Below are positions 13,934-60,400 of a DNA stretch of 64,000 nucleotides, piece after piece (within the stretch, counting starts at the first letter, position 1; each line of letters begins with the position of its first letter). Source of the stretch: Fimbriosthenelais zetlandica (taxonomy: Eukaryota). Both the position numbers and the translations under genes were made by a program. Location: NCBI GenBank assembly GCA_977030845.1, contig OZ365114.1, forward strand, positions 17,112,001-17,176,000, in the 5' to 3' direction. The notes under the pieces are model-generated. The model was not told where the DNA came from. It ran no database searches and saw nothing but the letters and a program-made list of their open reading frames with translations.

Positions 13934-14207
13934 TTTAATCTTTTAGAGAGCAAAAATACAGGATTTCCGTATACAATAACAAACCAAGATTTCATTTGGC
14001 CGCCATGTTGGATTATAATCTCGCAGCCAAATATCGCTAAACCGAGATTTCTTCAATACAGCATTTGATTTTTCCATTAATATGTAATCATTTTTTATTA
14101 TTTAAATATAACTACAATAATGTAACTAAATATTTGGAAAACAGCATTTGTTAAGAAACATTATCTTTCAAGATTACTTTACCCATGATGCTTAGCGAGC
14201 TGTCAAA
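13934..14207. promoter_or_regulatory. Compact bidirectional promoter / 5'UTR region shared by WDR44 and Fmr1
   Basis: Only 274 bp separate the WDR44 ATG (13933, minus) and the Fmr1 ATG (14208, plus). A YY1-type motif GGCCGCCATGTT (CAACATGGCGGCC on minus) lies at about 13998-14010. No CGG repeat tract is present. Confidence 0.75.
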
Positions 14208-15441: not shown

Positions 15442-18400
15442 GTCAGTATGTCTTTAATACTTAATCTAACCTTTACTCCATACCAAGCCTCACTTCCTTT
15501 TCAGGATATTATGCACCTAAAACATTATGATCATTAGAGATTTTCTAAGAGTCCAATTAAGAAAATGTAGGAGTGAGCCAAAAAATCTAGCGGTCCACCA
15601 TATTTCTAAAATAAATCTGATTATCTCTCGGAGACGTAGCTGGTGTCTCCTAGGAGTCCATCATGATTTTTTTTGAGTCTCAGACTCACGGACTCCCGTG
15701 GAAATCATGGACCCCTGGCAGATAATGTGTGGCTGTGTTGATGGCTTTTGGTTTCTATGGTTCATATTTACATAATCCATGATGTGTTAGGATGGTAAAA
15801 TATACCCACGTCATAGTGGAGGAGCGAGCAAACAAAGCCCTGCTACAAGAGGCTACACATCCCTCACATTTACTGAGGGCGGCCACCCAGCCACACCTTC
15901 ACCTGTAAACACTGGGTCTTGAACATTTTTTATTTACCATTAATTATCACGGGCCTTATTTTTTAACGGGCTGTAGGTCTAGGCCTACATTGCAAATGAG
16001 TCCATATGATGGAAAATTAAGCTGAAAGTATTTATTTTTGAACCGTTTCTGATGGTTCATGCCTGCTTAGAAGACTATAATTGCCCAGTGGACGCAAAGA
16101 TAGTCTTCTATTCATTGCCAGTGTCTTTTCTTAAATGGCAATCATGCCTGATGCCCTGAGTGACCTTTCCATGGCCCGTGGTCTGTCTGTGATAAGACTG
16201 AATACACATTGACACCCTGGGTCTTCAAAACCTTCTGCCAAGGCGTGTCAGGTTTCCATGGAAATGCACCCTATGTGTATCTCAATCTGTGTGCGTCTTA
16301 GGATTTGTGATTTTCTTTCCAAATAAGATAAGAAGCTGTCTTTGGGCCCCATTTTATGCCTAATATGAAGAACAAATTAAACCTACGACTGAATGGGGTT
16401 ATTTGAGGCTAAGCCTTGGTATTCAATCCCCCCCCCCCCCCCTCCAGTGACCTGCTTCGCAGAAAATGTCTATATTATCTCTTGCTGAGATTTAGATGAC
16501 TTTTCAGGATGTCTAAGTAATACTAAAATTGACCCTGCTTATTATAAAAGATAGGAAAGGAGGGTATACAATAACCACATAATAGTGACATTTCTATTCT
16601 TTTATCTTCATGAAGGAAATATCTATTAAAACTGGAATTATCAGACTGAGAGGGAAAGATAATTTCCTTGACAGCAATTACTGTTATTAGGAGAACCCAG
16701 GGTGAGAGAGGCCAGGGCAAGACTAGGCAGAGCTCTGTAGGGAGCTGGCGTGGTTATATTGGCCATTGCATGGAGGTATATATCTACCTTGGGTTGTATA
16801 AATAAAACTATCACAGGTCATGTTATGAACCCATTGCCCCGAGCCAATATTTAGTGTTTATTACCCTCCCAGAGCGAAGGCATCCATTCATGGATCCTAG
16901 TAGATAATATATATCAATATTTGGTTTGAACATTCTTTATTTAGATTATTTGTTAGGTATATATAGCACTTAGGTTTTCATAATACCAGCATGTCATGAC
17001 TCACATTCTAGAGGTTATATTTTATTTCTTCAAACCTGGTTTCACTAAAGTATTATTAATGATAAACAGTATTATCATACTGTTGTACATTGGCGTACCG
17101 ATACCGATTAGGCGATATATTGGTCAGGAACTGGTCTAAATTTTTCTTCGTCTCCATGGTCGTGGTGCTTGACTTTTTTATTGTTCTCTTCGTTTGACAT
17201 GGAGTGCATTTGGGAATTACATAATATGATATCCAAAGCTCCAAGTCCAAATTATACATAAGTTTATGACTTGTTAGAATGAAACAAAGAGATAAGAAAA
17301 ACGATAACTGTTATCAATTGGGGTCGGTATATGATGATCCATCATAACCCTGTATTAACTTTAATCAATCAGTTTACCATTGCTGTAGTGACGCCGATAT
17401 TGATAAGCCATAAAGATTATTGATTGTCAATAAACCACAAGCAGATCAGATCTGTTAATATATGTGAATAAAACACTCACTACATATGAATGAATGGTAT
17501 ATAAAACTGGCAGCCGATGCATGTAACTCTCATAGCCACTGTCATTATTATATTTGTGGCGAGAGAGGAGACCATTACAACCTGTTCAAATTGCCATTTC
17601 ACGTTTCTGAGTATTGCAACATGATTTGTGCCCTGATTCTTGCAATTTTCATGTGCTTTGCCTCTATTATTGATGCTTTGGTCGGGTGTGGTTTCCATAC
17701 GAGATAAGGCTTCTATAGAATGGCGACAAAGAGTTCCGATGTTATATTTGGATCTATTCCAAATCATTTACCTGTGGTGTCTGTTTAGTAAGGTAGCAAA
17801 AAAGCAAGCATGAGGAAGCAGAGTAATGGAGGAGTAGAAACAATGTATTGAGGGAGTTTACGGTGTCTGACCCACATGTGACTACTAAGTGATGTCCTAC
17901 AAACATGAGCCACCTCAGGTAGTGTACCAGTAGTTCAAGGCTCACAAAGCCAGATGGAAGAAGCCTGGTAGCTCAATACAAGAGCAGACAGTTATTATAA
18001 GCTTATACGCCTATATAACCTTATTACATGCCTATTCCTGGACCCTCTCCTCTTAACAATACACTCACTGGCTCTCTGCCAATTGGAGGAAATGATTTGA
18101 GATTTTCTTCCCTCGTTTACAATGCTTCATGGTTTCAAAGAAAGGCCGGGAGGAGCTGGAGCAGGGAGGAGGAATGTATTGTGAAGGGTTGAGGTTAATG
18201 GGAAATGACATTTACTTCAAACTGAAGTCACCTCAGAGATTATGGGACAGACCTTGCCCTAATCCACATGTACGTGGTCTGTGTCTGTGATTGTCAAAGC
18301 TTATTTCCTGACTTTGGTGGCATTAATTTGTCCCTTGAACTTTAATGTTAATGTTAAAACTTGTCTGTGGCAAGTCTAGTGTGAAGTCCTCGCTTCTCGA

Positions 18401-27400: not shown

Positions 27401-30400
27401 CACCCCAGTCTTTCATCTTAATCAGCCTTTCAACTTGACCAGCTCTAAAGCTGACCCTGGATTGAGGTTTTTTTACAGCTCCTCGGGACAGTTCTAAGCA
27501 CGCAAAGAGCCCTTTAATTCACCAACCAGCCTCTCTCTGCCTCCACAGCAGAAGACTGACCTTCTCTTTTCTCATACTCAAAGCACCCGAGGTGTATGCA
27601 AAAAGGGTGGCCAGACAAATGAGCAAAGACCCTGGCCATTTGAAGACCATACATGTAATACACTAGCTGTCTTAAGATATAGAGACCCAGGCCATGTCCT
27701 TACATAATGTGACACGCTAGAGACGGGTTCTCAACCAGGCTCAATCTGAGGTCATGTTTTTTGTCCTTTGTTTGGTCTGGTGGTGTGTCTGGATCTCAGA
27801 CATTACTCAGTGATCACACATCTCATGATTCATCATATAGATTGTAATAAATCCCCGGGAGGAGAAAAGGGGCTGCACGGAAAGTGATACATTCATCTGG
27901 TGGATTGCAGTTTAAAATAGTGCGGCTCCTGGAATTGGATGCATAAGCCATATGGAAAACAATAAATCAGTTACTCTGTGGTTGATTGCACCCCCCCCAA
28001 CCCCCCCCCCCCCAAAAAAAAAAAAAAAAAAAAAATCGGACTGGACACCGTTGTCTGGGTGGACAGTATGCTTATCCATGCAGTGTCTAGGTATCTGCAC
28101 TTGATTCACAGTGGATACTAGAATCCAGCTGACAGGGCATATATACCCGTCCCCCTTTCTCCTATATCTACTCCCCCGCTTATCCATGCACTATCATTCA
28201 GTGCCCTCACCCTCCACCTCCCCCCACCAGACATAACGTCAATGTTAGCGTCCGACCAGACTCCATCCCACTTAGTCCTACCATAGTTGATTGAGTCTAG
28301 TCAAAGTCTGATGATTTTTTCTTTTTACTATTTTCTTCCTTCTGCTATGACAAATATGGTGGGTCAGACGGGGCCTTGTGGATTGGGACAAGGAGGGAAT
28401 GAGTGCCTGAGACTATAGGAGCCTTTGTCCATGCTACTACCCCCACTCCTCCTCACCCTCCCCCAGACCCCCACCATCTTCCACCTCCCCCATCCTCATC
28501 TCCCACCTGGGCCGTCTGCATCTCAATCCATGTCAATATAATCACCCTTACTCTGTGAACCCCCTACAGTAGGCGATTGCCCCGTGACCTCTCCGTGTTC
28601 AATCATTCACTTGAAATTGTATCTCCCAGGGATACGGCCATGCTCTGGGCAGAATTTCTCAATTTTCCCATCTTATCAATCTTCTTCTATCTTATAATGC
28701 ATTATATGGACACGACAATTAAATATTCTTTTGATTTTTGGTGTATCAACTGACCAAATATAACTGGAGATGATTTTTTTATTTCTTCCATTCAACTTCA
28801 GTGGTTTTTCTCCTGTCCCGAGCACACATGCAATTTCTGTTTGCACCTTTGTTCCTATCTTTGATTGATAAAAGCGTCATAAGATGTATTGATATTCTTT
28901 TAAAACCTGATCCTATTGCCCATGGACGGATTATATATAGCTACTTATAGGTTCATTACATAGAAGGCAGTGCGACATATAAAACAAAATGGGAGGGAAT
29001 GAAATAACATGGGATAAAGAATGGAGCATATAAAAAGAATAGAGTAGGAAATGGGAGAAGTGAAACATTGGGTGACTGTGTAGCACGTGATGACAGTGAT
29101 GCATGGAGACCTCGCGTGCGTTAATGGTTGGTGGTGTAAGGTGTGGAGGTAGACAGAGCTGGCTCTCACGTCCCAGGCCCACCTCTATATACCCGCTGCC
29201 AAATGTATCTTGATACCTTGAGCAGCTCGATTCCACTGAGGAGGGCTTTGTAATATTGAGTGATGAGAGCCTGTAGGGCTGGCATGGCTGGTTGATTTCT
29301 GGCTTGAGGCGGCGTGTTAATACAGCCTCTTAGTGCTTATTTCATACCTCCAACAGAATTATAGCTAGACTTCGTTTAATGGTCTGATTCCGTAAGCATT
29401 ATCCAAGTTTCCCATTGTTCTTGTCCACCCAGTGCTGCTAACTGGGATATCGAAGGCCAGAGTGCCCAGACAATTCGTTCATTGCCTGCACATGGTGAGA
29501 GGAATGTAAAAGAACCGTGCTGCCATTCGATAATAGCAGAAAATTCGGCGCCAGAAGCATGTTTTCCTTTCGTCCTGAGGTAGCTGAAAAATAATTGCTG
29601 ACTGGACATTAACACTTACAGATAATATTCATCCACCCTTGCTTCGTTCAACAATCCTATATTACTTGTGACACTTGTGACGAATAACATGTGACACATA
29701 AACAACTTCACAGAAGTTTTTTTTTATCCAACTTAGAGTTCTCGCGCGTCATTAAAAATACTTAAATTTTATAATCTCAGAACCGCAGGAGCCCTGCCAA
29801 CTCCAACACTCCCTACATATAAGAGTCTAGAGTTTTTTTCCGTTTCTTCCTCTTCCTGTCCTCCCATCATTCACTGACTGCCCTTCACGCCTCCCTCTGT
29901 GTGAGAGGTCGTGAAGGACCTATACAGGCTATAGCCCTGCCTGGGGAAAAGGTCCTTTCAGCTCAGCCCTCTACTCCGCCTATAGCCGTCACACTGACTG
30001 ACCGGTGGTGAGGGATTTAGACTGCTGGTCTAGCCAGTCACCAGACTCTGTACTGGTCTCACCCTCATAAACCACCTCACCTATTGCCCCGTCCTCTCTG
30101 CTCGCATTGCCTCCCTCCTCTCTGACCCCTTATGCTTAGAATCCAACATCAATTCTACACCAAAAACCCGGGACAGAAGCCCTTGATGCATTGCCTTGAA
30201 TACAGCATGTTGGCAAAGAGGATGCCCTTGTTCCAACCATGTAGCAGTCCTGAGGGATGGATATTCATATTACTGAATTGATTTTGTTCCCAAATTGTTA
30301 ACATGTTCAAATGTCATATCTTGCGGTACTTACCAGCAAAATCCGTTAGAACAATTTTCAGTATTTTGTGGGAAAATAGTTGTGTTAGCAAAGAGTGGTG

Positions 30401-33400
30401 TGAAGGAGAACATTATTATCATTGGTGATTTTGATCTTTTTGAGTATGTTTATGAACTATTCTGGGTTGATCCCCTCTGGGTCACTTTGTGATGGAGCTA
30501 ATCTTGAAATGTTTAGCTGTACTTTACATCCAGTAGGATTAATGTATCGCTATCCATCATATAGAGAGAGCCAAGTGTTGCCAGCAGCCAGGCCACGTGC
30601 CAGCATGGGGTATTTTCCCTGTCTGTGTAACACACACACCACCAAGGTTTACCTTCAAGTTTATCACAACGTTAGATGCTACTGACTTACATTGGCGGGC
30701 AAGGTCGGGGCAGGTGCAAGAAAAGTGAAGGGAGGTGCAGATAGGTGTAATCGCGTTACCATAGCAACGCTGTCGCTAGCTGGCCCTGTGTTATCTCTCT
30801 GCTCCTGTGAGGGGGTCATGTGATGTGGTCACGTGTCTGCACACCCCCTTCTCACCTGGATATGAGAAGTAGGTCATCGTTAGTTTACATTCATATCATG
30901 TTTATGTAAGGATAAGTTATATAGGTTTCTAATGAGGCATTCACCTATTTATATGATCTAAAAAAAAGTAATGCACCCTCCCAGTTAGGTCTCCCCCACT
31001 CCGAATCAACCCACTTTATATAAAACAAATTTGCATATTTTCCTAGAGATTCTTCTGTCATAGATCTTTGAAATTCTCACGTAGCTTCTTGGCTCTTGTG
31101 CAGCATGAAGTTTTACCTTTAAATATCCTATATTTACCATGATTTTCTATATAGGGAAAATCAATCAAATCCCTGATCCTCTAGGCTGTTCCACTGCAAC
31201 CCAGATTTAGTGAACCCTTTAGGTCAGCCTCCCTCATATTGGGTTCCCTTAGTAATCAATAAGTGTAGAGTATGCTATCATATTCACCATGCCTCTCTGT
31301 AATGTAACCCTGGCCCACCTTTCCCTATAATGGTCTTCCTACCTTTATCCTGTCCCATTTCCTACTGCTATTTCCAGCCCTTGTTTTGCCATTAATTAAA
31401 ACCTTAAAAAACAACTTAAAAACCTAAATTAGGATTCTACAATTAAAGGCAAAAGCTGTGCTATCTAGGTTTAGGAGGGGGGCATGCGTAACTTTCATTG
31501 GGAGAAATTTATTGCATTTAAACATGAATACCCCCTGATACTATAATTGGCCTGTCTCGTCTGGTATCAAATTAAAAAAATAATTGGAGGGTTCTTGCCA
31601 TTTCAATTAAGGGAATACATATTAATTTAATATACCCCTAGGGATTGCTGATGTAGTGGCGATTCAAATTTCGCTCAGTCCAAGAAAAAAACACTTCCCC
31701 CTCTACTGCTGATAGGCATCAGTATGTAGGGTGTGTGTTGACGGTTTTACTTGGTTCAACTTGGAAATAACCGTATCTGTTTCCTTTGTACATCCCTCAT
31801 GCAAGTTTAATTCAGGCAAAGTTGACTTTGCCAAAAGCACTCAAACAAATGTGCACATACCGGTTCATGTTCGGTTTTAAAAAGAGCACCATCGTGCTTT
31901 TCTTTGAATAGAGGTAATTGAGGGTGCAATCTGGCATCTTAATGTAAACCGCACTCTCATTTTCTTCCTATTTTTGTCATTAATAATAAAAAAAAGAAGG
32001 AATGTACGTAGACGTGCTTATTATACATTTATGACCATAAATGTTACCAAAGAATATGAAGGCAATCTTTGCATGATTGCCTTCAGTTAAACCAAGATAT
32101 TTGTTGATCAGTTTAATACAAAATATCATAAAATCTTCGTACAGTATGCATCAGTATAATAGGAGTGGATATGGTTTGAAAGTATAATCTATAGGGCTGA
32201 TGAACAGACTGCCTTTGGAACTAGTAATATATATCAGTATAGTCCAGTAGGTGTTCTTTGAAACTCTATGGCTTAATGGTATAATTGATAAGTGGTCTAT
32301 ACTTTGAAACTATAATGTTTGGTTTTGTAGATAAGTGGGTCTGTGTGTTGAGATTATGGTGAGGCGGTATAGAGGCAGTGTAATCAGACTGTATGTGAAT
32401 TCCTCCTCCAATAAAATATCCAGCACAAGATGATCATCTGCTGGCTGTGAGAGGAGGACTGTGTGGAGAGAGCTATCACCATGAGTGTGTCTGTACTATA
32501 GCGGGGCGGGGAGAGCTGCTCTCTCCCACCAACAACTCACCTCCTCCTCACTGTATACACTCTCCTGGCTGCTGTTATAGTTAACCCCACCCCCCTCACC
32601 CACCCATACAAACATACCCCTAGCCTAGAATGGGAGGAATTTTCGAGGAATGCCAGTGACCGCCCTGAGAGAAGGCGAGGGGGAGATGCTGCTGGCTTGC
32701 AGGCTGGCTAACTGGCATCGGGCGGAGAAATGATGCCACGTGGATCCGAGGGTTAAAACCACACAAGTGGAAAAGGACTTGCATGTGTATGACATGTGAT
32801 CGCCCCAACAAACATAGTTCACATTGGCCGACTTGAAATGAAAACCTTCTGAGATGACTTATGCTAAACTAGCCTTGTCAATAACTTGTGAAGGGAAACA
32901 ATTTGTTACGCTTGTGAACACTGAAGCAGATGAAATATCCCCAGTGGTACCTGTGTTTTGGATAATTTATTTACTATGCAGAGTCATTATTTGGGCCTAA
33001 GCCATGATATATTACCCCAATGTAGATCCAAGCATTTGCATGCCAATAAAGACATTGAAGCACCATCAATAGACTTCCTTCATTGATGGATTGCCTTCAC
33101 ATTAGATGCTGGTTGAAAGCTCCATGCATAACTGTACTAAGTATGTGGCCGGGGAAAGGTAGACTTTCCTGTATACACACAGCAGCATTAAGGTTAATTC
33201 TCCCCTTTGCTCTTACTCTCTGCTTGTGGCATAGATTTGCTCACTCAAAAACCTCACATAAAAACATATACCTATAGCCATAGTGCTTTACCGAGAAAAT
33301 AACCCAGAAAAATATCAATTTAAACAGAAACATAAGACATGGGGTGAACTTTGAATATAGACAGCCAATACCACCCGGCTTTTTTTGCCGCCAAATCTGT

Positions 33401-36400: not shown

Positions 36401-39400
36401 ACATCTACTTTCTGACACTTATCTGACCTCAAAATGTCAGCAATTCCCCAAAGTTTCAAGCGGTACTTCAACAGGCAGTGTCTTCCTCTATGCATTGAGA
36501 GCCTCTAGGGCTACCCCTTCTGTACACACTATTAGATGCTCCACCTTAAGTATCAGTGATTTTTTCCTGGCCTGATTCCGGATCTTGAGCCTGTATAGAT
36601 CCTCAGGTTGTCACACCTGATGACGTCACCTATTGTTGTGCTCAGTCAGTGAGGGGACTACACATGTATGATGATGTATTACACTGACGGTTAAAAGACT
36701 AAGCCCTGCTGCCAGCCCCACTTGACAGCAGGAGTCTGTCACACTGTCTGAGGGGCTAACATGAGCACAGCTCCCACCCAACCACTGCTCCCAACAGATA
36801 AGCTCCACTGTGGTTAGAATGTGGACAGGGGGACACACTAAGATGTGATCCAGTACTCAGTGATTAAGAACTAGATTTAGAGATGTCTTGTCTTCATTCC
36901 AACTGCAGTGTCTTTCGATGTAACTGTAATTTTGAAATAGAAAAGTAACCGTTGTAAATTGTGCTCTAATAGTTGATCTGCTCATGCGTTGAACTTGCAC
37001 CCTAGAGTGGCGCAACTTACCTGACTAGCAAAGGAAATTGGTGCTCGCTAAAATTGTGCATCAGTGACCTCTGAAGTGTGCTAATATTAAATATAAACTG
37101 CTTTAATTAGACAGGTAACTTTTGTAAACTTTTCTTATTAGAAAAATAACTTTTGTAAACTTTGTTCTAGTTATCCATTGTTGTAACTTTTGATTCCTTC
37201 TTTTGCAGGTGAGTTTGCTTCGATGGTAGATGCCACTTGGTTCAAGTGTCCAAGATGGATACCAAAATAAGTACATCAAAAGGTGAAGGTAGGGGAAATG
37301 TCCAAACCTGTAATAGTGCATAGAGGACATGCCAATTCAATTGCACTATCTGAATTAGCCTGTCTTAAAATTTAACCCAAGAAATAACCCTCTCTCACCC
37401 TAAACTCCAGCTTGTTTTGTGGGCCATTTTCGGTTGAAACTTGACATTTCACTGAAAATATCCAGATGTCCTCATGGTGAGATCTATTTCTTGCCATTTG
37501 ATGTTTTTTTCAAGCAGAGAGTGACATCCTCCTCCGCCTTGCTGTAGCCAATCATGAGGCCTGTAGGACAGTGAGTGATGGAGGAGGAGCAGGAAGCTGA
37601 GCTTCAGCCTGTCCACTCCACCCTGGGCCTAATTCATCTGGCCCTCCCCCCTCCCTGCCACCTAATGATTGGATGGAGGGCTTATTGAGTCTGAGTTTGG
37701 CAGTTGGTGGAGCAGTGGATCGATGTAGAATTAGCTTGATGTGTACGACTCCACCAATCATTTATAAGACACCCGATCGTTGCCGCTGCCACAGTCTTTG
37801 AGACTAATAACAGAGACGAACAGCAATTCCGGCCGGGATTTAGGCCCAAAGAAAGACAACATTGTCTGTGGGCACAGCAATTCGAAAAGGGACTATAGAT
37901 GTACTTCCCTCTCTCATTGAATTTTAACTTTACAAATTGAATGAAAAGGTCATGCTTTTGTGCTGTAGTCCTTTCACCAACTTTTGCAAGTTGAAGTTCT
38001 CAACTTAAAACTGCTCATGTACTTTCAATGGATTTACAGTGTAATTAATACATTGTAAATTTAATGTATTGTCCTATCCGTTGACAAACTAGTTAATGAC
38101 ATTTTATGTCCACAGAACATTCTAAGTCTTTCTCTACCCCAGAAAAAACTCCTTGCTGCGACCATGAGTGCGGTGATATATGGGCAATGAAGCGTTTTAC
38201 CACTAACAATCTCTGCCCAGGCCCACGCTCGCATTGATTTGCCATTTTCCCCAATCAAATCAAAAGAATGTGGTGGCGAGGCCGCTGACAATTTTCCCTG
38301 TAATATTAGGTAAAGCGGGCCGAATGTCCTCCTTGATTTGCTCATCGAGCAACTCTTGGGTAGATATTTTTCTTCTTTGTGAAGCTTTAAATGTATTCTC
38401 CCTGCGCCATTAGATCTTTCGCTCCTTCCTTGTCTGTTTGCCCCTAAGTGTACTACTCACAGTGATTTTTCACTGGCCTTATTTAGGATCTTAAGCTTGA
38501 ATGGAGTGCCATATGATAGTGTCACACATTGTTGTACTCATTCAGTGACGGGCAAACACATATATGATGTGTGCGATTCTTATACCATTTTATCAGAGAG
38601 CGCGATGACTGAGGCCAGACAAATGAGACAGGGACGAGAATGGATTATTATTATTATAGCCGGGCTATGTGCTGACGGTGACCACTTGGCCAGCTTTCCC
38701 ATTTCAGTCTTGCCACCACTTATCATCGATCCATTGCATGTCTCCTCTGCTGTGTGTATGGGATAACCTCTGGTCCCCTCCTCCCATTTACTTGTACATA
38801 TCCTTCCTTCTGGTGGATCCAGTAAGAGGTGGGGGGTTAGAGGTCAACCATACAGTCGTTTAAGTCATCCACACACCGCCTTGATTTTTCCTTCTCGTGA
38901 TGTATCTACTCATCTACTAACGCATCCTATGAGCCTCCTTCCTGGAAGACAAAGCTAAAATTAGCCTTAACACAAGATTGCGCCGTTTAAGAATTTTAAT
39001 TAAAAGGCGTGTCTCTCTATTTAGAACTGAGTAATCGGCGCTATAAATCAGCCTGAATTAAAGGCGGTACATGTGCGGTGATGCAGAAAGACAAATGAAA
39101 GGGAATAAGAGGGTGGAATGGTAATGTCCTAACGAGGATGGCGGGTTACTTTACAGTCGGCAATGTGATACTATTCTAGCTTCATCTACTTATACTACCA
39201 TTGTACTAATTGCTGAGGATAATGCTTAGGGTATCCCAGATTTACATAGGAATGCTGTCTCAGAAATAGTTGAGATATTAATTGAATTTCAGTTTTGACT
39301 TCTTGACCCTTGTGTCCACTAGTGAGTTAATTTCTAAAGCTAAATGGTATTATTTTTGCACTCATTTTTGCCGAAAATTCTTCGGGCATCCCAGATCTAA

Positions 39401-45400: not shown

Positions 45401-48400
45401 AAACAGTTCCCACAATATTGAAAGAGTCCATTGCTAATGCTTCTAAATTACAATAGGAAGGATGGAGTCAGGCGAGCCTGTTTGGTCATGCGATGGACTT
45501 GCTCCCTGACATTCGCTCTAAATGTGTCGGGTGTGTTGTAATTTTTCAATGTGAGGTAACCATATTAGAGGTCTGCTTGCCCACTTGTTCTCCCTGCTAA
45601 CCTCGCGTGGGAATCATGGTTAGGGCCTTTTAGCTGTATTGGTGTTCATCCGCTATTGTTCATCATTGAGAGCTATATAAGGGAGATGTTAAGACCTTGT
45701 CTTCATTTCCCTCCACTCTATTCACTGATGTCATGGGAAGCACGTGCACTGACTGTACAATATGATGGCTCGTCACGTCTTCATCCTCTTATAGGTCAAC
45801 CCTCCAAATATAGGTCCATCTTTTATGTCTCTATTAAATATTGCCTTCTCTGGCATGTAGCGTACACTCCCGTACGTGTACATGTATTTTCGCCTCAATT
45901 CAGAGCGTAATTGACCAGTTTTTGTCCGCTTCTGTACAAGGCAACATTGCTTCAATTTGCAGTTTGAATTTCCCACTGCTGAACCAATAACGTTTTCTCA
46001 ATATTTTAATTTGGCATTTTTTGGACTACTTGTATGTTGAGAGGCTATAGAGAGAGGGGACCTGGTTAGCCGGTGGCCCTAATTGTGTACATTACTCATT
46101 CACCACTCCCTCCCCTGTCTGTACAGAGTTCCTTTACTCTTGTTTATTGCTTCTCAATGAACTCTTTGTATTGTTCCGTTTCCTGTGGGAGGGAATACAC
46201 ATGCCTCAGTTGTACTAATTGGGATGTAGACATAAAAGATAAAAGCTTGTACATTACATCGTCTGCATCAAATTATACACTTCCGCTTCAAATGTGGTTA
46301 TAAAATAGTTCTAATGTATATGGGGAGTAGAAGGTGGAAAGTTTTAATATATTAGCGAGACTGTTCCACGATGCCATACCAAGTCATTCCCACCTCCGAC
46401 AGTGGAACATGATCTGTGGAAATCTCTTCTGACATGAAAAGCTTTTTCCCTTTCACTTTCAGCTGAAAATATGCCACATTGTTACAATGCATTACCATCT
46501 AGTGACATTGACGAGTCCTTTGAAAATATCGCAGGGGCAGTAACCTTCTACGGCAGGACTGTCGCAGAGGCGGTGAATGAGATTTGGGAAAGAGATAGAT
46601 ATATATGTATGGCATGGACTTATTAATCATTTTGATTAAATCTGGCGTCCGCAAAGAAGGTCCTTTATAGGCAGGGGAGGTCAATTCGCATTTGCCTCTT
46701 TGCATCAAGTGACAGAGTAACGCTCAGCCAGGACCAAATTTTAATTTCCATCTACTACTGGGCATTTACACTGTAGCTGGTTGTGTCTTTTCTAATGACA
46801 CCTTGTCGATTTCACATGGAATTCATGAATCGTTATACCAGGAAATAATTCTAAATATTCCATGTGATGTACTCATTCATATTCAGCGAATCCGAGCACA
46901 TCGGAGTTCAGCTGATTAAAGATAGATGGTAGAGCCGAGGATGAAAAAATGGGTTTCCCCTTTACTCCTTTTACAAACATCAAAGGTCTGGCTTATAGAG
47001 ACATGATTGCCGGTGATGTGGAGTGGACCAAGCATGCTGGTGATAATGATGAAATATTACTTCACATCAAAGGCTGGTGGGCACGGTGTGACTGGTGCCG
47101 GAGTCAGATACAATATTGGATCATAATTTACCGCCCTCCACACCAACACCTGATATTAGACTAATTGGATGCCCTCCCGACCACTTACTCACTGGAGAAG
47201 CCAGGATATGGACCAGTGTCTGAATTAAAATGCACTGCTTTAGACCATAGACTTATTCGCTCATGTATAGAATTTGGTATAGATCTAATAACAAGATATC
47301 TGCATAGATCTGTCATTACAATGATGTCCAGGACTGTCTTTCAAGTCCCGTATATCACTCCTGTAGTTACCAGTCTCTTGTACATATATTGTCCTTGCCA
47401 GGAGGCAGAGGTGAATGCCCTGTGTTTGGTGAAACGAGATGCATTAATCATTCAAGCCCTTCCGTCCCCCTTCTAGATTCATGTGCCCAACCTCTTCCTC
47501 CCTGGAGTCCCAAGCGCCAGAGGGATTTATAATCTCTGAGTTTAATCAGATGAATAGACATTTAATGTCAGGACAAATGTCCAAGATGGCTTAAAAAGGT
47601 TCCATGTAGGATCATGTAGGAAATCTTTTAAAATATACATAACAATCTGGAATATCCAAGTGCACGTTCAACTGGCTCCTTTATACAGAGCTGTTCTTGT
47701 GATCAGCAACAATCTGCTGTGATAAATCAAGTCTGTAGAGGGAGAAGTTCAGGAATAGGCCTGTCAGGATGTTCATGCCCTAGCCTGAGAGGATCGACTG
47801 AAGTAGAGCCTTGACTGTACAACAAGGGTTGGCCTCTATCGACCTCTATAGATCTCTGCATACAATCAGGTTGAGGAGATCTTCATTCAGATATAGCTGT
47901 GGTTGTGGGGGAGCTCAGAGCGGTTATTAACGATTTTCCTCCTTGTAATACATGGCCGACTGGGAATGAGTATAAGGGTGAACTTGGTTCTATCTTAAGG
48001 CATCAATAAAAGTATAACGCTCCTCAGGCGTCATTAAACATAACGCTCATCAGGCGTCGTCAAACATAACGCTCATCTGGCCTCATCAGTAGCCCTATGT
48101 TCCAGTGAACATTATTTTATGGGATGTTAATAACAACAGTACCGAACCCTAAAGCCATTACATGTAAATTATTGAGAACACCGCCGAAACCCCAAATGAA
48201 TCCTTGTAATTGTTCATTTGCCGTTCAATATCCACATCAATACGGAGATAATTATAACGAGAGGATGATGGGAGCATTATGGTGGAGACAGTGTATTGGT
48301 GGTGAGCATTGGCCTGTGAGGGAGATTGAGCTCGTTGATTTGAACTGCTCTTGTGGGAGAGCTAGTTTTAAAAGGCCTGTCAATGCTACTCATTCTCCAA

Positions 48401-51400
48401 GATGGATGGGATTGAAGCTCCCAATTTAATCGTTTATTTTCATCCTCAATAATCAATGGCAATGTCGACTGAGATCAACCAGCCGCCATCTTTTGTCCCT
48501 TGCTATTGGCGATTATTGAATTGTAAGAAATTACATTGTATGTTGTAGCCAGGGTTTTGCTCAATGTATTGTATTGTAATTCCCTGAAGCTTGTGATCAG
48601 ACTTTCATTTGAGAGACTTTTAAGGAACAGATTTGTAAGAATAGACTAGTAGGCTCTCCCTGAAAATGGGTTTCTATCTGGATTACATAGCAGATCGATA
48701 TTGTATGAAGTGTGGATTACAAATTAAATAATAATAGCATAGGCTATTAGTCTAGTATAGACGTACATCAGACGAAACATTTCTAATTAGGCCCACTTCT
48801 TTCTTAACTTCCTTATGGGATGTCATCAGAATCTGTAATGATATATTAGCAGCTGCTTCTCCATCAACTGGGATGACAGGATGACATCATGGAAGGCCTT
48901 TAAGGTTTCTCCAGGAGATCACAGCATATACAGTATCTGCCAACTTGAGTTAGGAACATCACATCAAGGGCTTCCAACGCTGAACCCGTGGAGTTGTTCC
49001 CTTAAACTCAATGATTGACTTTGCAGTGAGCGCCTCTGTTCGGCCCGTGTTGGAGTCAGAACATGTACTTCTGTCAGGTCCGAATGATTGAAATAAGATT
49101 TAGAAATATAACTGGGTGGGAAAAGGTCCCATATTTGATATTGATTGAATTGGCTCAATATTAACTTGTCTTTCTCATTGTACCAGGTTCGCCTTAAATT
49201 GGGATTCCACTGCTGCTATATTTTGCTTACGACACTATTGCGACAAAGGGTACTTGTGTCGCAATAAAATTGGTAGTTACAAATATTACACTCGCAGTTA
49301 TCGCAGGGTTGGGGTCCCTGATTTAATCTCTGAATCTCTATTATATGAAGCGATTTATCATCCAATGGTCTTCAGTGGTAAACTATCACTTCACACTGTT
49401 TCAAGTCCTAGATAGCATGGGTACCGCAGCCTCCCCTCCCCACACGGTCATCCATATCAATACTTCACAGCAGCTCTAACTCTTTCTTTGTTCTCACTGT
49501 GTTCAAGAGGCTTTGAGACGATCTCTTATGAACATGAATAATAGCAGAACCCCATATTGATGGATATGCACTCAGTTGTAATCTTTTATCAATCCCCGTT
49601 CATGTCAGGCTAGAGTTTAAAGTATAGGGAGTTGAGAGGGGTGAGAAGAAAGGGTTATATGCTCGTGCTTCAGCTATTGTAGCTTCAATGAAAACCCCTT
49701 CTATTTCTATACATAGCGACCTTCAAATCGTAAGATGCACATCGTTGATCTATATATGGATTTTGTTATATATAATAACGAGAAGGGGAAATGAAAGTGC
49801 TGTCATCCTCTTATCTTGGCATCCAATGGTTCTTTTAAATGGAAGAACGAGGGGAAACGCAGGCGAAGATTACCTGTAATGGAAGCATCTCCTTGCTGGT
49901 TTTCAGTGACTGGATATTGTGTATTGGAGGAGTGGGAAGCTGCTCGTGTCGTGGGGATGTGGGCTGGCGGTGAGAGGATGGGAGGATGTGTGGATCATTA
50001 GAATAGTACACAGAAAAAAATCAAGGGTTAGCAAGTTAGTCAAAGTGACTGATTTTCGGAGTTTTTAAGGGTCAAACTGACTGTGTCTTTTTGTCCGAAC
50101 CCTTTTGACTACCCCTCAGTTAAATTGACTAAGAATCTTACTAACCCCCAGTTAAATTGACTAAGACTGTCCTGTGCTTTTGTCCGAACCTTTTGAATAC
50201 CTACAGTCAAATTGACTAAGGATCTGACTAACACTTCGAGCAGTCCCATTCCGCATACTGAATGCTTTCCCTATATCCGTACCACCTTAGAAGTTAACAT
50301 TATAAAGGGGTATAAATGTGCAGGAATATTAAGAACAAGCAAAATGGAGAAGTATATGTCCCTGAACTTATATTTAATTGAAACATAGTGAAACTATAAA
50401 TTCAATTCACGCAAAGTTAACCTTCAAGATTTGTACTCAATGCATTTAGTACCATTAGGACACTATGAAAAATAATAAATTTGTTTACAATGTAAGTACA
50501 CCGCACATGGCCTTCATGGTAAATTTCATCATATAGACTTCAAAAGTACAATATAATCTTTGTCACAATGTCCTCCCATTACAGAACATTGAACACTATA
50601 CAAGTATAATGTAGAATTAAAAAACAAATACATGTACTTGAATTATTTATCCTGAGATTTACATTTGGAAAAAAATAAAATATTCAGCAGGTGATATTTG
50701 GTATTTCAGGATAAATAAGTTTTTTAGTTTTTAAAAGGCTATATTATAGTAGTGTTCAATGCCACTTTATATAGCAAACTATGTGCATAAAGTCTTTATC
50801 AAAATGTTATGAAATCAAATATATCACGTAAACAAATTGTAGCGAAACTTTCAAACTGGAACACCTTGCCAGTACCATCATCCATATGAGCATTATGACA
50901 TAAATATGAAAAAAAAAAAATTAGTTGAACATTGTAAGTATGCCATACATCGTCCTCAATATCCAAAATAATAAATAAATTGTATGTCATCATATAGACT
51001 TCACAAGTACAATATAAACTTTGTCACAATGCCATCCTATTAATGAGCATCGAATACTAGTATAATGTGGAATTTAAAATAAAATACTTGAATTATTTAT
51101 CCTGACACATACGTTTGGGAAAAAATCAAGTATTTAGCAAGTGATATTTGGTATTTCAGGCCTTCAGGCCTTAGCCTAGCATAATATGTGTATAAAGTCA
51201 TTATCAAAATGTTATGAAATCAAATATGTCACATATACGTCGTATTTTCCGATTGACCCGCATTATCGTTGTAGTTAAACTGTGTTTCTTCTGCTTCTGA
51301 ACGATCCATCCCAAATCTTTTGAGGAAACTTGAAACTGCAAAAAAATGAATGTCATCTTAATCCAATAAATAAAAAACAGGATTTCCTGAAAAGGCTAGT

Positions 51401-54400
51401 GCACACTCATAATAATAGAATTACCCGGGTACAGCAGTAGGCTAGAGCTAACATTGTAGGCCTACCAATAATCTATAGAACTTTCAATACCATATTTAAT
51501 TTTTTGTCTTCAGCTATATGGAATAAAAATCGTATGAATCTAGCGTTCACAATTTAGTACCAGATATATTAATTATACCTGCTTACCTATATTATCAGTC
51601 TACTGAGTTCCAGGTGAAAGTTCCTATGGTGCTCTAGGGGGAGGCTGTCAGGAGTTTTCTGGAAATAAATTTAAAAAATTGTGAGAAAAGGGGATGAAAT
51701 AAATGAATTGACACAAGAGGCGGTGAAAATATTGCAACCTCATAAATGGTGAAAATAGGCGTATATAATTATGGTGACATTGATTTGAAGGGTAGGCCTA
51801 CTGTGCTGCCCTCAGGTGAGTTCCAGTCACTGGAATCACCTGGTCACTCATTTCAAGTTAAAGACATGTAGCCCTATATTGTTTTACCTGTAGCCTACAT
51901 TAAAATAATCAAATTAATTTTATATAGTTATTTCTGAGTATGTAGGTCTACGCCTACGGTGCGGTTAGCCTTTAGCAGCTTAGGGCCAAGACTAGAGTGT
52001 GGTCTGTGGATGTGACCAGCTATGGTCCATGTCAGATCTGGCTCGATTTGAGAGCAGATCTTGGATGAAAAATAAATAATGAAATAGGGATCTGATCTGA
52101 TCATAAATCTGGAGGCCTATAGTGAAGAATACGCTTTAGTCTGACCTGTACGAGTTTTAAATGAAATCTATTTGCAAGCATCAAGGAAGAGAAACACTGA
52201 AGCCAGTGAAGGGACTGATGGCCGATGGCCGACATAACCCCAATTATCGCCCAATCATTAGCGATTGGACCTATAATTAATGCCATTATTTGACAACATT
52301 TTCATTCAAAAACACGATATACTATGTGGTATGTAGTTCATGTACATGGAAATCCAATAATATACATCAAAGATTACCATGAACAATCAAGATTACCTGA
52401 AAGACGATGTGTGATGGTCCTTAGTTATGCTGCCAGCAGTGAAAAGGGCGCGATCAGTCACGTGATGTAAAAAATGGCGCCCAGAAGCAGACGGATGTCG
52501 AAGACTTAGTCAAACTGACGAGGACCGCGTTAGAAACATAGTCAAAAAGTGCCTATCCCCCTATTTGACTATGTGTCTAACCCAATTTGACTAGGTGTCT
52601 AACCCACTTTGACTAGGTGTCTAACCCAAGATTTTTTTCTGTGTAGTTTTCCCACGGAGATCCATCATGCCATCTCTAATGATTACCTACACCAATGAGC
52701 CCTACTCCTCAATGGCTGGGTCTGGGCAGAGACGATCCCACGTACTTCTCGACCGAAAATGCTTAATGGAAACCAGACTAGGGCTAATCATTTTGTAACA
52801 TGAATTCACATAAAATCTCATTTTAAGAGCAGGTTATTTATGTTCGAAACGCATACATCTTGAAGTTCTTTCTGTTCCAAAATTGAGTTAATCTTTCTGT
52901 TTGAACAAACCCTCTTCAAGATCTTTAAAACGGACTTTCCATTAATTTAAATTACATGGTCACACGCCACTGTGCTTCCATTGTTCCCATCACTTTTTAT
53001 CAATATTAAACGAGACATTTTGATATTCTATTTAAAATTCTCCAAAACATCCAAGAAGGTTCCCACCTCCAAGAACCATCTAGCTTGTCCACCGGTGCCA
53101 ATCTTCTGTCTTGGTCTTTTTACCCTCTTTTTATTATTTGGTTACCTTTCCCCGGCCCTAGAATTGGGACTGATTAATTGGGTCGTTCTGGTGGCGATTT
53201 TATGGCTGTCGCTGTCGCTGCACTGGGAGCCTTTGCTGGATGCCTGTAACAAGGGAGCCTAAATGGACGAGTGTGATGTGGACCGGACAAAGAGACGTGT
53301 TGAGAAAAGTCTGAATTGCTTCTCCTTCCTTCATGGGAAAATGGCCAGAGGCAAGGAAATATCCCGGCAAGGCAGACCAATAGATCTCTTATAATGAAAG
53401 CAGTGGGTAAAAGCAAAGCTACCAACTACCCTCCAAACAAAGGCGCGAATCAATCAGGGAACAAATTAAACCTTCTCTATGAATTGATTGGTTTGGTAGT
53501 TTAAAAAGCCTTTCTTCGTGAAATGTCATTCAAATTGTATGCAAAACCATGACCGGTCTGATTGAAGATCAAATGGTTCAGTTGGAATCGTGGATTTACT
53601 GAATGGAATTGAATAATGTGGCAATGGAATAAAATGACAATGCACATTGATTTCATGCCCTTTTGTTGAATTTCATTTTTTTTCTTCGATTCTCCTCCTC
53701 TGGAACAAAGAAGGGTTCTTAAGATGGATCTTGTCCGTTACAAAACCCTAATCTCCTCGTGTCATATGATTGCAGACTTTTTAAGGTTTGATAAACGAAC
53801 CCCTCTGGGAAATCTTCAGTAGAGAGGAAGGATATTATGATTGGATCTCCAGAGAAAAGAGGAAGGATGGATAAAAAACAATAGTGTCCTAGAGATCATC
53901 AGAATCAGAAGATCAAGGGTACCATTCAAGCGTAGATAAGGCGTGGCAAGCATGTTGACATTCTGCAATTGATAAAAAGCAAAACTGTTTTAGGGCATTT
54001 TCATTGCAGCAATCTCACAATAAAACACAACCCCACTCCGCTGATGTCTCAAATGCAACAGTTGGAGAATTATTTTCCAATGCTTGTCTCGTGAATCTTG
54101 CTTCATGTTCAGCCATCTAGGCCATTCTCTTCTGGACAAATACAACACAAAATTTCATTATTGTCATTTGCGCACTTAGTCTATCAGCATGCTAAAACTG
54201 CTGAAATCAATGCACATCATGGTAGAGTGATTATTCTATCTAAACGATTCCATTGATTTTCAATAATTAATTGCTGCTAGATTATTTATACACGTCCAGA
54301 TTATTATCGGGGCCAGGCAGTAACCCTTGTACAGAGGCTCCGGCATGATTAAATATGGCATCCTGTCTGCGGGTGTAACGTCCGGGTAAGGAGCCCTGGC

Positions 54401-57400: not shown

Positions 57401-60400
57401 TCTTCTTCAGCCTGAAAATGTCAGAAGTTCACAAGCACCTGCCCGTCTAATTGGGGGAGATGAGTCTGGTTTGGGAGTGATTTTTGATAGAGCGCATCAG
57501 GCGTTAAGCTTGTGGGGATTACCACTTCTACCAAAACATAAACACTGAACTACTCCTCTACCTCTCTAACTTACTGATAAAAAGTGAGAGGAGAGGAGTG
57601 GAGGATAGAGTCAAGTCAAACAGACTCGAGTGTTCCTGGGTTATCTGCATGAGGAGCCCCATCCATTTCCAGACCTAAACCTAGTCTTGTTAAATAATCT
57701 GAAAATGTAGATCAGTGAAAATAATGGCGGGCTATGAGAGGACCAATGTTTCTAGGCAGAGAGAAGTCCTAACTAAGGTGGTAAGGTGGTCAATGCCCCT
57801 ATACCACTCTACCAATGACCCTAGTCAAGTGTCCCTCGGATCATTTCCTGTACTTTAAGCTTGATTCCATCCACTCCTTCTCATGGTAGTTTCTGAGAGG
57901 GTCTCAGGATGCTTTCTGAGAGGGTTTCAGGATGGCCGGAGTCTGAGAGGGACTCTGGTAGGTCTCTAAGAATCTTAGGGCGGTTCCTGTTTCAGTTTAG
58001 GAGAGGTTCTCAAGGCGTGTCTTATGGTTTACAGTCTGAGAAAGTCACAGCTTGGTTTCCCGTGAGGGTTTCAGGATAATTTCTGAGGTCTTGGGGGCAA
58101 TTATAGATGTTAATACAATACATACATACAATATAAACTTTCATGTTTGAGAGGCCCACACTTAGGACTCTGACTCAGGTTCAGAACTCTGTAAATATAC
58201 CCTAATCACTGGACAGATCTTAGGTGCAGTTGAAAAAGAAGCAAGACGTAGAGGAGTTGACAGATTCCATTAACAAGCTTGTTGAGACGCCTCCCAGCCC
58301 ATCATTTCACTCATGTCTGGAGGTTACCTTAGGGTTGGCTAATTTGTTCATGGGCTGGGCGTCCGGAACACAATCAGTCTGAGGTACCTACAGGCACATC
58401 CCTCACCCCACAATTACTGTACATCTGGAGATGTATGGTGATTGTATACTTACTGAAATACAAGAGAAAACGACCGCAATAACAACCTGATTAACACTGT
58501 TGTGGGACGGAAAGGGAGGTCTAAAGATTGAGAAACAAAGTGGAATGGGCCGGTGAAGAATCTTTAAAGGTATAGCCCAAAAGAAGGACAAGATAGAGAG
58601 ATGCAAAAAAATAAAAAAAAAATGGCCGCCGGTTGTGGTATGTGGATTGTAGGAGGTAACTTAGACAGCTTTTGTAGACTGATTTTTTCCGTAAAATGTA
58701 GACGGCTGTGAAGAAGAAAGAAGACTGTAGATTATGATGAAGGTTGAGCATGGTGGTGGATGACTGGGGCCTGGCCTTCATGTCCATCTCTTTCTACTCG
58801 TACCCGTCACTCGCTAACCATTGTGAATTCACCTTGGCCACTTGCCATTTACCCCCACCTAAACACCAACACATGCCGGTCTAGAATACCTTAAACCACG
58901 GAAATAAACACTAGATGTATATAAAGGCGGACTATAATATATTCTGTGCCAACCTGTGTTCACAGCAATGTCTCAAAGGCTTTTTATGTGTTGAGCCAAT
59001 GGAGGTGTATTGTGAAGACAATGTGGCACGGAGTATTACTGGTTAACACACAGGCTGGTGAGCACATGTTCACCACCATGAGCTGCTCATTAGTGATGAC
59101 AGACGTTAAATCATGAATGGTCATGACTGAGGATACAATACCCGCTATGTCTGCATGTTATTGACTGACAGACCAACAGAACATGGAAGATGGACAGACA
59201 GGAGCTCAAAACAAGACAGGTGATGGTCAGGTGGGAAATCAAGACAGGAATTGCATGCTTGGCATCTGGACTTCCGCATCCCTGTATAATCCGCTTGTAT
59301 AATTGACAAGCATTTCCATGATACCCTGACCAATTCCCATGCACTTGACTCCTAACCTTGAAATATTGAGAAATGAAGAAGTAATGCAGCGTGAAGCAAC
59401 CATGTGTTTGACATCCCAGGCTGGTGGAGGGAATGGGACTAGAATACCAATATGTTCTACCGCTGACAGGTCTGTGGGAGGGGGCTGTATATGTTAAACC
59501 ATCACCCGCTGGCTACACATGCTCTTTGCTGCTCCCATGTGTCTACCCTCCACCGATCCAACCCCTCGTCCCCTCCCTGGTCAGAAACCCTGGAGGGTTC
59601 TACTTTCAGAGCCTAAATTCTTCTACAGTCCATAATTCATCCTATATGAAAAATGTCCTGGCAGATCCTATTTTGCCTTAGCATTTCACACCTTGACTTA
59701 TATCTATTTTTATTTTCCCCAAATATTGTAGTATGATCCGAGACAAACTATTCAAAATAATGTTAATTGCAATCAATTTAACTCCAAATGGTGCCTTGTT
59801 TTGCCACCTGAGAGTGGCCTATCTTGTATCGTTGTTAGGAGACCTGCTGTACGTGTGTAGCATCTCTGGCAGGACTAACTTTGATCATGTGTCAGCCATG
59901 ATAAGAAGTTTCAGTCTCGGGTATCTGGACTTCCGCATCCCTGACAGAATTGGGTGAAGGTGGGCGATGGGATGTGGCTCTGGATTTATTGACAATTTGT
60001 ACAACATCCTTGGCTCTTTTATAAGCACTGAATTACCCTCGTCCCTGTCTCCCCAAAATTAAGCGCCAACTGAAAGAACATAGAGATTGTTTCACTTTGC
60101 TATATTGAATCATAATAAACTGTGGGTTTTGGTTCATATTGATGTTCCTCTCTTGCAGACACTATTGCCAGCGTCGGAGACGGAGCCGTGTGGATGGTGG
60201 CAAGCACGGATAAAAATGCTGAAGGGCGAGTTTACAGTGGTCGAGTTTGGAGAGTGGGATAAAGCTAGGACCGAAATTGTGAGAGTAGAACATATTAGGC
60301 CCGTCAATAGAAAGTAAGTATTTGTAGAAGATATGCTTGAATTAATACTTGCAAGGGAAAACATGTACATATTTCTTAAATAATATAATAAATTCTGTAT

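What the first reader, a model, noticed from the sequence alone, without database searches (positions are those of the whole stretch)
15442..60158. One 44.7-kb intron in an otherwise compact gene pair
Seen: the next-largest introns are 1,746 nt (WDR44) and 907 nt (Fmr1). The intron splits the tandem Agenet region, holds no long ORF (longest track entry 195 aa, low complexity), and is mostly unique, non-tandem sequence. A few recent TEs explain only a small part of it. Inference: it is a distinct functional compartment rather than uniform genome expansion.
Basis: partly seen in the sequence, partly recalled or inferred. Interest (0 to 1): 0.7.

Follow-up and report, generated by a model that had tools for sequence, protein, structure and literature searches.

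The report
Giant single-copy intron in Fmr1
The invertebrate fragile-X gene (Fmr1) here really is split by one 44.7-kb intron of almost entirely unique, non-coding DNA, but such giant introns recur in otherwise compact genes of this genome, so it is a good example of a known pattern, not a new kind of genomic compartment.

Summary
A GT..AG intron at 15442-60158 separates two Fmr1 exons, and joining them restores an Agenet domain. The intron has no gaps, no ORF with a Pfam domain, no Rfam or tRNA hit, under 1% tandem repeats and about 8.5% interspersed repeats. Most of that is one very young 2.65-kb transposon with terminal inverted repeats.

For it:
- The expansion is position-specific.
- The same intron is also the longest in abalone (19.4 kb), chiton (9.0 kb) and Capitella (8.0 kb). 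It is about 1 kb in an oyster and 0.7 kb in an acorn worm.
- These long introns share no detectable sequence.

Against it:
- GC and CpG depletion lie within the genome background.
- A random 10-kb control was equally unique.
- Giant introns or gaps of 34-53 kb occur in otherwise compact myosin and kinesin genes of this genome.

This scan has already noted many giant introns with ratchet points elsewhere in this genome.

A strong recursive-splice motif sits on the sense strand at 48.7% of the intron, so two-step removal is likely. No RNA runs were listed, so splicing, expression and assembly are unverified by reads.

Verdict: a new member of a known kind, of moderate to low interest.

The parts
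14208..14258 (+). Fmr1 exon 1, coding part ([17 protein letters not shown]), followed by the donor GTAATT
15166..15218 (+). Fmr1 exon 2 ([17 protein letters not shown], then a split codon)
15342..15441 (+). Fmr1 exon 3 (VLPQNN...GDDIE). It ends in phase 0 and is the last exon before the giant intron.
15442..60158 (+). Giant intron 3, 44,717 nt, GT..AG. GC 0.413, CpG o/e 0.41, about 91% single copy.
60159..60314 (+). Fmr1 exon 4 ([14 protein letters not shown]...RPVNRK), the body of the second Agenet domain
60596..63301 (+). Downstream Fmr1 exons (KH domains, RGG region) separated by short introns. Coordinates are approximate, taken from tblastn pieces.
37195..37215 (+). Recursive-splice (ratchet-point) motif TCCTTCTTTTGCAG|GTGAGT, with the junction at 37209|37210. 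It lies 21,768 nt from the donor and 22,949 nt from the acceptor.
37210..37287 (+). Possible RS-exon, closed by AAG|GTGAAG or AAG|GTAGGG. Read in the phase left by exon 3, it reaches TAG at the 7th codon.
   Evidence: read directly; inference
50007..52645 (.). Young non-autonomous DNA transposon with imperfect terminal inverted repeats of about 47 nt. Copies 96-99% identical lie on at least 7 other contigs. It carries an internal duplication of about 450 bp.
29387..29632 (.). High-copy short interspersed element, 69-91% identical to many copies. Its first 74 nt or so are the best conserved.
15568..15706 (.). Short interspersed repeat, 74-79% identical to copies elsewhere
48014..48088 (.). Minisatellite with a 26-bp unit, 2.9 copies. 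Longer arrays occur elsewhere, several of them on the same chromosome.
49192..49275 (.). MITE-like repeat of about 80 bp. Its copies elsewhere often lie as nearby inverted pairs.
5600..12900 (-). WDR44-like WD40 gene, head-to-head with Fmr1 (approximate extent)
   Evidence: the same pairing is seen in oyster, abalone and chiton

Best explanation
This is a genuine, contiguous spliceosomal intron (intron 3, phase 0, at the start of the second Agenet domain) of the single-copy Fmr1/FXR orthologue of a probably spiralian invertebrate. It belongs to a genome-wide class of giant introns that sit inside otherwise very compact genes. Its filling is anonymous, single-copy, CpG-depleted non-coding DNA. 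Inferred: this is old insertions and duplications decayed beyond recognition, plus whatever regulatory DNA the gene keeps there, with a few later insertions on top, one of them very recent. Inferred: the pre-mRNA is probably freed of it in two steps of about 22 kb, through a recursive splice site at the midpoint, as in long fly introns. The position is shown to be prone to length: the same intron is the longest one in abalone, chiton and Capitella. No function beyond that is shown.
For: Exact GT..AG boundaries, and an Agenet domain restored across the junction. Exons 1-3 have no second copy in the intron, and the gene is single copy. 283 open segments of 50 aa or more gave no gene or TE domain. 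No Rfam or tRNA hit. Only about 8.5% of the intron is repeated elsewhere. GC is 0.413 and CpG o/e 0.41, against background ranges of 0.37-0.43 and 0.35-0.65. Control regions were either fully unique or held a TE. A kinesin gene has a single 52.6-kb intron between adjacent model positions. Gaps of 34, 42 and 52 kb occur in two myosins and another kinesin, while most of about 50 such genes are compact. Orthologous intron lengths are 19.4 kb (abalone), 9.0 kb (chiton), 8.0 kb (Capitella), 1.0 kb (oyster) and 0.68 kb (acorn worm). The recursive-splice motif is unique in the window, and none of 100 shuffles contained a match. None of 9 control AGGTRAGT sites had so pyrimidine-rich a tract. Genome-wide the motif occurs 174 times against 91 for the reversed control. 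Among the first 100 places listed, my by-eye count found 13 same-strand neighbour pairs 8-50 kb apart and no opposite-strand pair. In flies, recursive sites occur in 63% of introns over 40 kb and tend to lie near midpoints (PMC6110457).
Against: No RNA or DNA runs were listed. The junction, the recursive step and the assembly are therefore unverified by reads. The TE-decay origin of the roughly 41 kb of unique DNA is an inference from absence; nothing positively shows it. The genome-wide excess of the motif is only about 1.9-fold, so a single site could still be chance. The own-genome search scores only the best candidates and skips very common words. The 200-kb sample would miss families of fewer than about 2,000 copies.
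Confidence: 0.62

Rival explanations
1. The intron is a selectively maintained regulatory or timing domain. It would hold enhancers for Fmr1 (or for the divergent WDR44 neighbour), or its length itself would delay expression. It would have been kept long since the mollusc-annelid ancestor while its sequence turned over.
For: The orthologous intron is the longest in abalone, chiton and Capitella as well as here. The rest of the gene is extremely compact. Repeats contribute little, so growth is not recent TE load. [quoted passage not shown] Constraint can persist in introns that no longer align (PMC3622294).
Against: No sequence is shared between any pair of the four long introns. The intron is short in oyster and acorn worm. 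Composition is that of the background. No CpG island or other internal landmark was found. Four related lineages are not independent observations.
Confidence: 0.25
2. The intron hides an unannotated transcription unit: a long non-coding RNA, a small-RNA cluster, an alternative promoter or terminal exon of Fmr1, or a nested gene with very short exons.
For: Other giant introns in this genome were reported to hold nested genes (scan note s1-207644; not checked here). 41 kb of unique sequence is unexplained. Local GC-skew blocks of alternating sign hint at inserted units.
Against: No Pfam domain in 283 open segments. No Rfam hit even at E 0.5, and no tRNA. No tblastx match to the orthologous introns. 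The longest ORFs are low-complexity translations of pyrimidine-rich DNA.
Confidence: 0.08
3. Assembly artefact: exons 1-3 and exons 4 onward are joined through wrongly placed DNA, and the true intron is short.
For: No read-level check was possible. The intron holds a TE with copies elsewhere that are 99% identical.
Against: There is no N in 64 kb, and the window lies inside a 32-Mb contig. The TE is only 2.65 kb. A sense-strand recursive-splice motif sits at the midpoint, and the T>A skew matches + strand transcription. Long orthologous introns exist in independent assemblies.
Confidence: 0.04

Closest known systems
Long-intron class in genomes with bimodal intron lengths (teleosts and other vertebrates; Jakt et al. 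2022, PMC9438311)
   Same: The genes are mostly short-introned, with a non-random minority of very long introns. The same orthologous intron tends to be long in distant lineages. Regulatory and neuronal genes are favoured.
   Different: Here the lineage is an invertebrate, probably a spiralian. The contrast is extreme: 44.7 kb against no more than 0.9 kb. No conserved sequence inside the intron could be shown. The genome-wide distribution was only sampled, through myosin and kinesin genes.
Drosophila ratchet-point recursive splicing of very long introns (Pai et al. 2018, PMC6110457; PMC8605326)
   Same: A strong 3' splice site is fused to a strong 5' splice site at AG|GT on the sense strand. 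The intron is longer than 40 kb. The site is near the midpoint. Same-strand arrays of the motif occur elsewhere in the genome.
   Different: This is not an arthropod. There is no RNA evidence. The genome-wide excess over the reversed-pattern control is only about 2-fold. A downstream donor could define a stop-containing RS-exon, as in the vertebrate type.
Human FMR1 gene structure (17 exons, about 38 kb, intron 1 the largest; from my own knowledge, not tested here)
   Same: The exon layout at the N-terminus is the same, and the intron position between the ..VE and V.. codons at the start of Agenet 2 is conserved.
   Different: In the vertebrate gene this intron is not the large one. Here it makes up about 90% of the gene.
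Selective constraint in introns without alignable sequence (Vakhrusheva et al. 2013, PMC3622294)
   Same: The orthologous intron is retained and stays long in distant lineages although nothing aligns.
   Different: That study used quartets with close pairs to show constraint. Here no close relative was available, so constraint is not shown.

Membership tests
Spliceosomal GT-AG intron of an FMR1/FXR orthologue | Canonical GT..AG ends with a polypyrimidine tract | tested here: met
   GAG|GTCAGT and TTCCTCTCTTGCAG|ACA
Spliceosomal GT-AG intron of an FMR1/FXR orthologue | Joined exons keep the frame and restore the homologous domain | tested here: met
   85-aa joined peptide without stops. Pfam Agenet 30.9 bits. 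tblastn to FMR1/FXR proteins on both sides.
Spliceosomal GT-AG intron of an FMR1/FXR orthologue | Intron position shared with orthologues | tested here: met
   Same ..(V/I)E|(V/T).. position in oyster, acorn worm, Capitella, abalone and chiton. The ENA fragment P0001 starts its exon at the same residue.
Spliceosomal GT-AG intron of an FMR1/FXR orthologue | Spliced junction seen in RNA | not testable with these tools
   No sequencing run was listed for the exons or the intron, so read laying could not be used.
Recursively spliced long intron (ratchet point) | Juxtaposed strong 3'SS and 5'SS at AG|GT on the sense strand of an intron over 10 kb | tested here: met
   TTTTGATTCCTTCTTTTGCAG|GTGAGT at 37209|37210, with 15 of 18 pyrimidines upstream
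Recursively spliced long intron (ratchet point) | Motif beyond chance | tested here: met
   None of 100 shuffles of the window had a match. None of 9 control sites in 400 kb had 14 or more pyrimidines of 18. Genome-wide 174 against 91 for the reversed control, with same-strand clustering.
Recursively spliced long intron (ratchet point) | Recursive junction reads, lariats or a sawtooth in nascent RNA | not testable with these tools
   No runs listed
Recursively spliced long intron (ratchet point) | Site conserved in related species | not testable with these tools
   No close relative could be reached. The best FMR1 matches are only 55-60% identical, and the distant introns do not align.
TE-inflated intron | Most of the length made of recognisable interspersed repeats | tested here: not met
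   About 3.8 kb of 44.7 kb, or 8.5%. No hit in the 200-kb genome sample.
TE-inflated intron | Remnants of transposase, reverse transcriptase or integrase | tested here: not met
   No such Pfam family in 283 open segments of 50 aa or more. The three weak hits are at chance level.
Intron hosting a nested gene or known RNA | ORF with a domain, or an Rfam or tRNA match | tested here: not met

The most novel reading that the evidence does not exclude
A long intron at the start of the second Agenet domain is an ancestral feature of spiralian Fmr1 genes. Selection on its regulatory content or on its length (transcription delay, two-step splicing) would have kept it long for more than 500 million years despite complete sequence turnover. 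This species would be the extreme case, at about 90% of the gene.
Probability: 0.2. Interest if true: 0.5.

Novelty: new member of a known kind. Interest (0 to 1): 0.3.

Why it matters
The finding shows that in this compact 447-Mb genome intron length is sharply two-classed. The giant class is not made of recent repeats, which matters for gene prediction: exons 45 kb apart belong to one small gene. It also matters for reading the 'empty' DNA. The recurrence of a long intron at the same Fmr1 position in abalone, chiton and an annelid gives a concrete, testable case of length conservation without sequence conservation, in a gene of neurobiological interest. The midpoint ratchet motif adds one more candidate for recursive splicing outside arthropods and vertebrates.

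Tried and rejected
- **Sequencing runs.** None was listed for the mid-intron 10 kb or for the exon-rich 3.3 kb, so read laying was never usable.
- **Orthologue look-ups that found no record.** Saccoglossus X2, Acropora, Sepia, Owenia, Octopus and Potamilus.
- **Closest exon-4 match.** P0001 (ENA) has no DNA available.
- **Apparent extra copies of exons 1-2.** Hits at 16.5 and 17.6 kb contain stops, are weak, and are redundant matches from near-identical queries. Rejected as chance.
- **Compositional distinctness.** The intron's higher GC than its flanks looked like a signal but lies within the background range.
- **CpG islands.** None was found, not even at the shared promoter, so this test says nothing.
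- **The 195-aa and 139-aa ORFs.** Both are low-complexity translations.
- **C-terminal Fmr1 exons.** They could not be traced beyond about 63.3 kb.
- **Phylogenetic placement.** I did not attempt it. Identities are flat at 55-60% to molluscs and annelids.
Full report
**What is there**

The window is G000:C21:17112001-17176000, in a 447-Mb assembly of 79 contigs. It has no N.

On the + strand, Fmr1 starts at 14208 ([17 protein letters not shown]). Its first exons are:

| Exon | Coordinates |
|---|---|
| 1 | 14208-14258 |
| 2 | 15166-15218 |
| 3 | 15342-15441 |
| 4 | 60159-60314 |

Exon 3 ends GAG|GTCAGT, and exon 4 follows CTCTTGCAG|.

Exons 3 and 4 join in phase 0 to an 85-residue peptide without stops. 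That peptide scores as Pfam Agenet at 30.9 bits, residues 40-83, against a cut-off of 27. It aligns to FMR1/FXR proteins on both sides of the junction.

Intron 1 is 907 nt and intron 2 is 123 nt. The downstream introns in the window are a few hundred bases.

The gene is single copy in this genome. No second set of exons 1-3 hides inside the intron; the weak hits at 16.5 and 17.6 kb contain stops.

A WDR44-like WD40 gene lies head-to-head on the minus strand. The same pairing is seen in oyster, abalone and chiton.

**What the intron is made of**

- **Tandem repeats.** Six small arrays, about 320 bp in all.
- **Internal repeats.** The only ones belong to one element with 47-nt imperfect terminal inverted repeats.
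- **Known RNAs.** No Rfam family at gathering score or at E up to 0.5, and no tRNA.
- **Coding potential.** I scanned all 283 stop-free segments of 50 aa or more on both strands against Pfam. Three hits appeared at E 0.002-0.004, about what chance gives, and none was a transposon or gene domain. The 195-aa and 139-aa ORFs are P/S/T/L-rich translations of pyrimidine-rich DNA.

Searching the whole genome with the intron in pieces found the following repeats:

| Window position | What it is |
|---|---|
| 15568-15706 | short interspersed repeat |
| 29387-29632 | high-copy element of about 230 bp |
| 48014-48088 | minisatellite, 26-bp unit |
| 49192-49275 | MITE-like unit of about 80 bp |
| 50000-52646 | 2.65-kb TIR element, copies 96-99% identical on many contigs |
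| several places | weak matches of 50-270 bp |

Together these come to about 3.8 kb, or 8.5% of the intron.

The 15 kb from 30442 to 45441 gave only two matches of about 85 bp.

That tool skips very common words. As a cross-check I ran the intron by BLAST against 200 kb of the genome taken from 20 places, 6 flanking the window and 14 on other contigs. There was no hit at E 1e-5. This excludes very-high-copy families.

**Is it a distinct compartment?**

By composition it is not.

| Measure | Intron | Twenty 10-kb samples |
|---|---|---|
| GC | 0.413 | 0.37-0.43 |
| CpG o/e | 0.41 | 0.35-0.65 |

The higher GC relative to the immediate flanks reflects AT-rich compact genes, not an unusual intron.

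The low CpG o/e fits a long-methylated gene body, but two random samples are as low. No CpG island was found anywhere in the window, not even at the shared promoter.

Uniqueness is not distinctive either. One random 10-kb control had no match elsewhere at E 1e-10, while another held a 3.9-kb TE with dozens of copies.

**Giant introns elsewhere in this genome**

I used the exon-by-exon matches of two Pfam families as an intron sampler.

- **Myosin.** Most of about 17 genes have the head domain within 4-5 kb. One has a 52-kb gap between model positions 81 and 119, and another a 34-kb gap between positions 95 and 120.
- **Kinesin.** Among about 35 genes, one on the same chromosome has a single 52.6-kb intron between adjacent model positions 216 and 222, while its other introns are 0.2-3 kb. 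Another has a 42-kb gap.

The earlier notes of this scan list many more giant introns in the same genome: Kv2 at 58 kb, PRDM3/16 at 78 kb, and cadherin, EXT1 and liprin-alpha. I did not check those individually. They agree with my sampling.

So the pattern of one giant intron in a compact gene is a property of this genome, not of Fmr1 alone.

**Orthologous introns**

The species' own protein, and any close relative, is absent from the libraries. The best identities are 55-60%, to molluscs and an annelid.

I took gene loci from public assemblies and mapped the exons myself.

| Species | Orthologous intron | Rank in its gene |
|---|---|---|
| this genome | 44.7 kb | longest; about 90% of the gene |
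| Haliotis rufescens (abalone) | 19.4 kb | longest; next gap 3.8 kb |
| Liolophura sinensis (chiton) | 9.0 kb | longest |
| Capitella teleta (annelid) | 8.0 kb | longest; next 1.5 kb |
| Saccostrea cucullata (oyster) | 1.0 kb | not the longest |
| Saccoglossus kowalevskii (acorn worm) | 0.68 kb | not the longest |

The intron position is the same in all of them.

No pair of the four long introns shares any blastn or tblastx match. There is therefore no conserved hidden exon or nested gene, and any conservation is of length only.

The four lineages are related, though, so it may be one inherited trait. Long introns that stay long across clades are a described phenomenon (PMC9438311; PMC3622294).

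**How it is probably removed**

At 37209|37210 the sense strand reads TTTTGATTCCTTCTTTTGCAG|GTGAGT. This is a strong acceptor fused to a strong donor.

- **Window level.** The pattern Y10-N-YAG|GTRAGT occurs once in the window, on the + strand. None of 100 dinucleotide-preserving shuffles contained a match.
- **Control level.** In 400 kb of control strands, none of 9 YAGGTRAGT sites had 14 or more pyrimidines in the 18 upstream positions. This site has 15.
- **Genome level.** The pattern occurs 174 times against 91 for the reversed control. Among the first 100 places listed I counted by eye 13 same-strand neighbour pairs 8-50 kb apart and no opposite-strand pair. One run of four sites is spaced 19-27 kb apart on C10. 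That is what arrays of ratchet points in giant introns would give.

The site lies at 48.7% of the intron, splitting it into 21.8 and 22.9 kb. In flies, recursive sites occur in 63% of introns over 40 kb and tend to sit near midpoints (PMC6110457).

Read in the phase left by exon 3, the sequence after the site reaches a TAG at the seventh codon. Donors at about 37282 and 37288 could close a 72-78 nt poison RS-exon (inference).

All of this is sequence inference, because no RNA run was listed.

**Verdict**

The expansion is position-specific and not due to recent repeats. But nothing marks the intron as a special functional compartment, and similar introns recur across the genome.

- **Most likely (0.62).** An ordinary member of this genome's giant-intron class, filled with old anonymous DNA and probably spliced out recursively.
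- **Selected regulatory or timing domain (0.25).** Open, and testable with close relatives.
- **Hidden transcription unit (0.08).** Less likely.
- **Mis-assembly (0.04).** Least likely.

Noticed in passing
window 50007-52645: A very young non-autonomous DNA transposon with imperfect TIRs of about 47 nt and an internal duplication of about 450 bp (50523-51238). One copy on C25 is 99% identical over the full length, and many others are 96-97% identical. At C21:12.38 Mb, C13:36.07 Mb and C1:0.88 Mb its ends lie about 9 kb apart, which could mark longer, possibly autonomous relatives.
   Followed up: partly
window 29387-29632: A high-copy element of about 230 bp. Its first 74 nt or so are 85-91% identical across copies, while the rest is 69-75% identical. 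This is a SINE-like head-and-body pattern. ARAGORN calls no tRNA there.
   Followed up: no
window 48014-48088: A 26-bp minisatellite unit. Longer arrays cluster on the same chromosome (C21 at 15.25, 15.81, 16.73 and 17.71 Mb) as well as on C10 and C27.
   Followed up: no
window 5600-14258; L021, L024 and L025 at 1-1060: The head-to-head WDR44-like/Fmr1 gene pair is shared with an oyster, an abalone and a chiton, where the gene models lie 270-360 bp apart. It was not seen within 1 kb in Capitella or Saccoglossus. This suggests a conserved bidirectional promoter in molluscs and in this species.
   Followed up: partly
G000:C10:24137700-24209078 (minus strand): Four matches to the recursive-splice pattern on one strand, 19-27 kb apart. 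Three of them have the identical core TTCTCTTTTTCTAGGTAAGT or differ from it by one base. This looks like a ratchet-point array in another giant intron.
   Followed up: no
G000:C21:21855553-21908106 (minus strand): A single 52.6-kb intron between adjacent kinesin-motor model positions 216 and 222, in a gene whose other motor-domain introns are 0.2-3 kb. It is a sister case to the Fmr1 intron, 4.7 Mb away on the same chromosome.
   Followed up: partly
L008:4074-7988 (G000:C1:40004074-40007988): A 3.9-kb repeat with a 100% identical copy on C11 and more than 25 copies at 93-99% identity. It appears to be a currently or very recently active element family.
   Followed up: no
window 49192-49275: An 80-bp repeat whose copies elsewhere often occur as nearby inverted pairs, which is MITE-like or foldback behaviour.
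   Followed up: no
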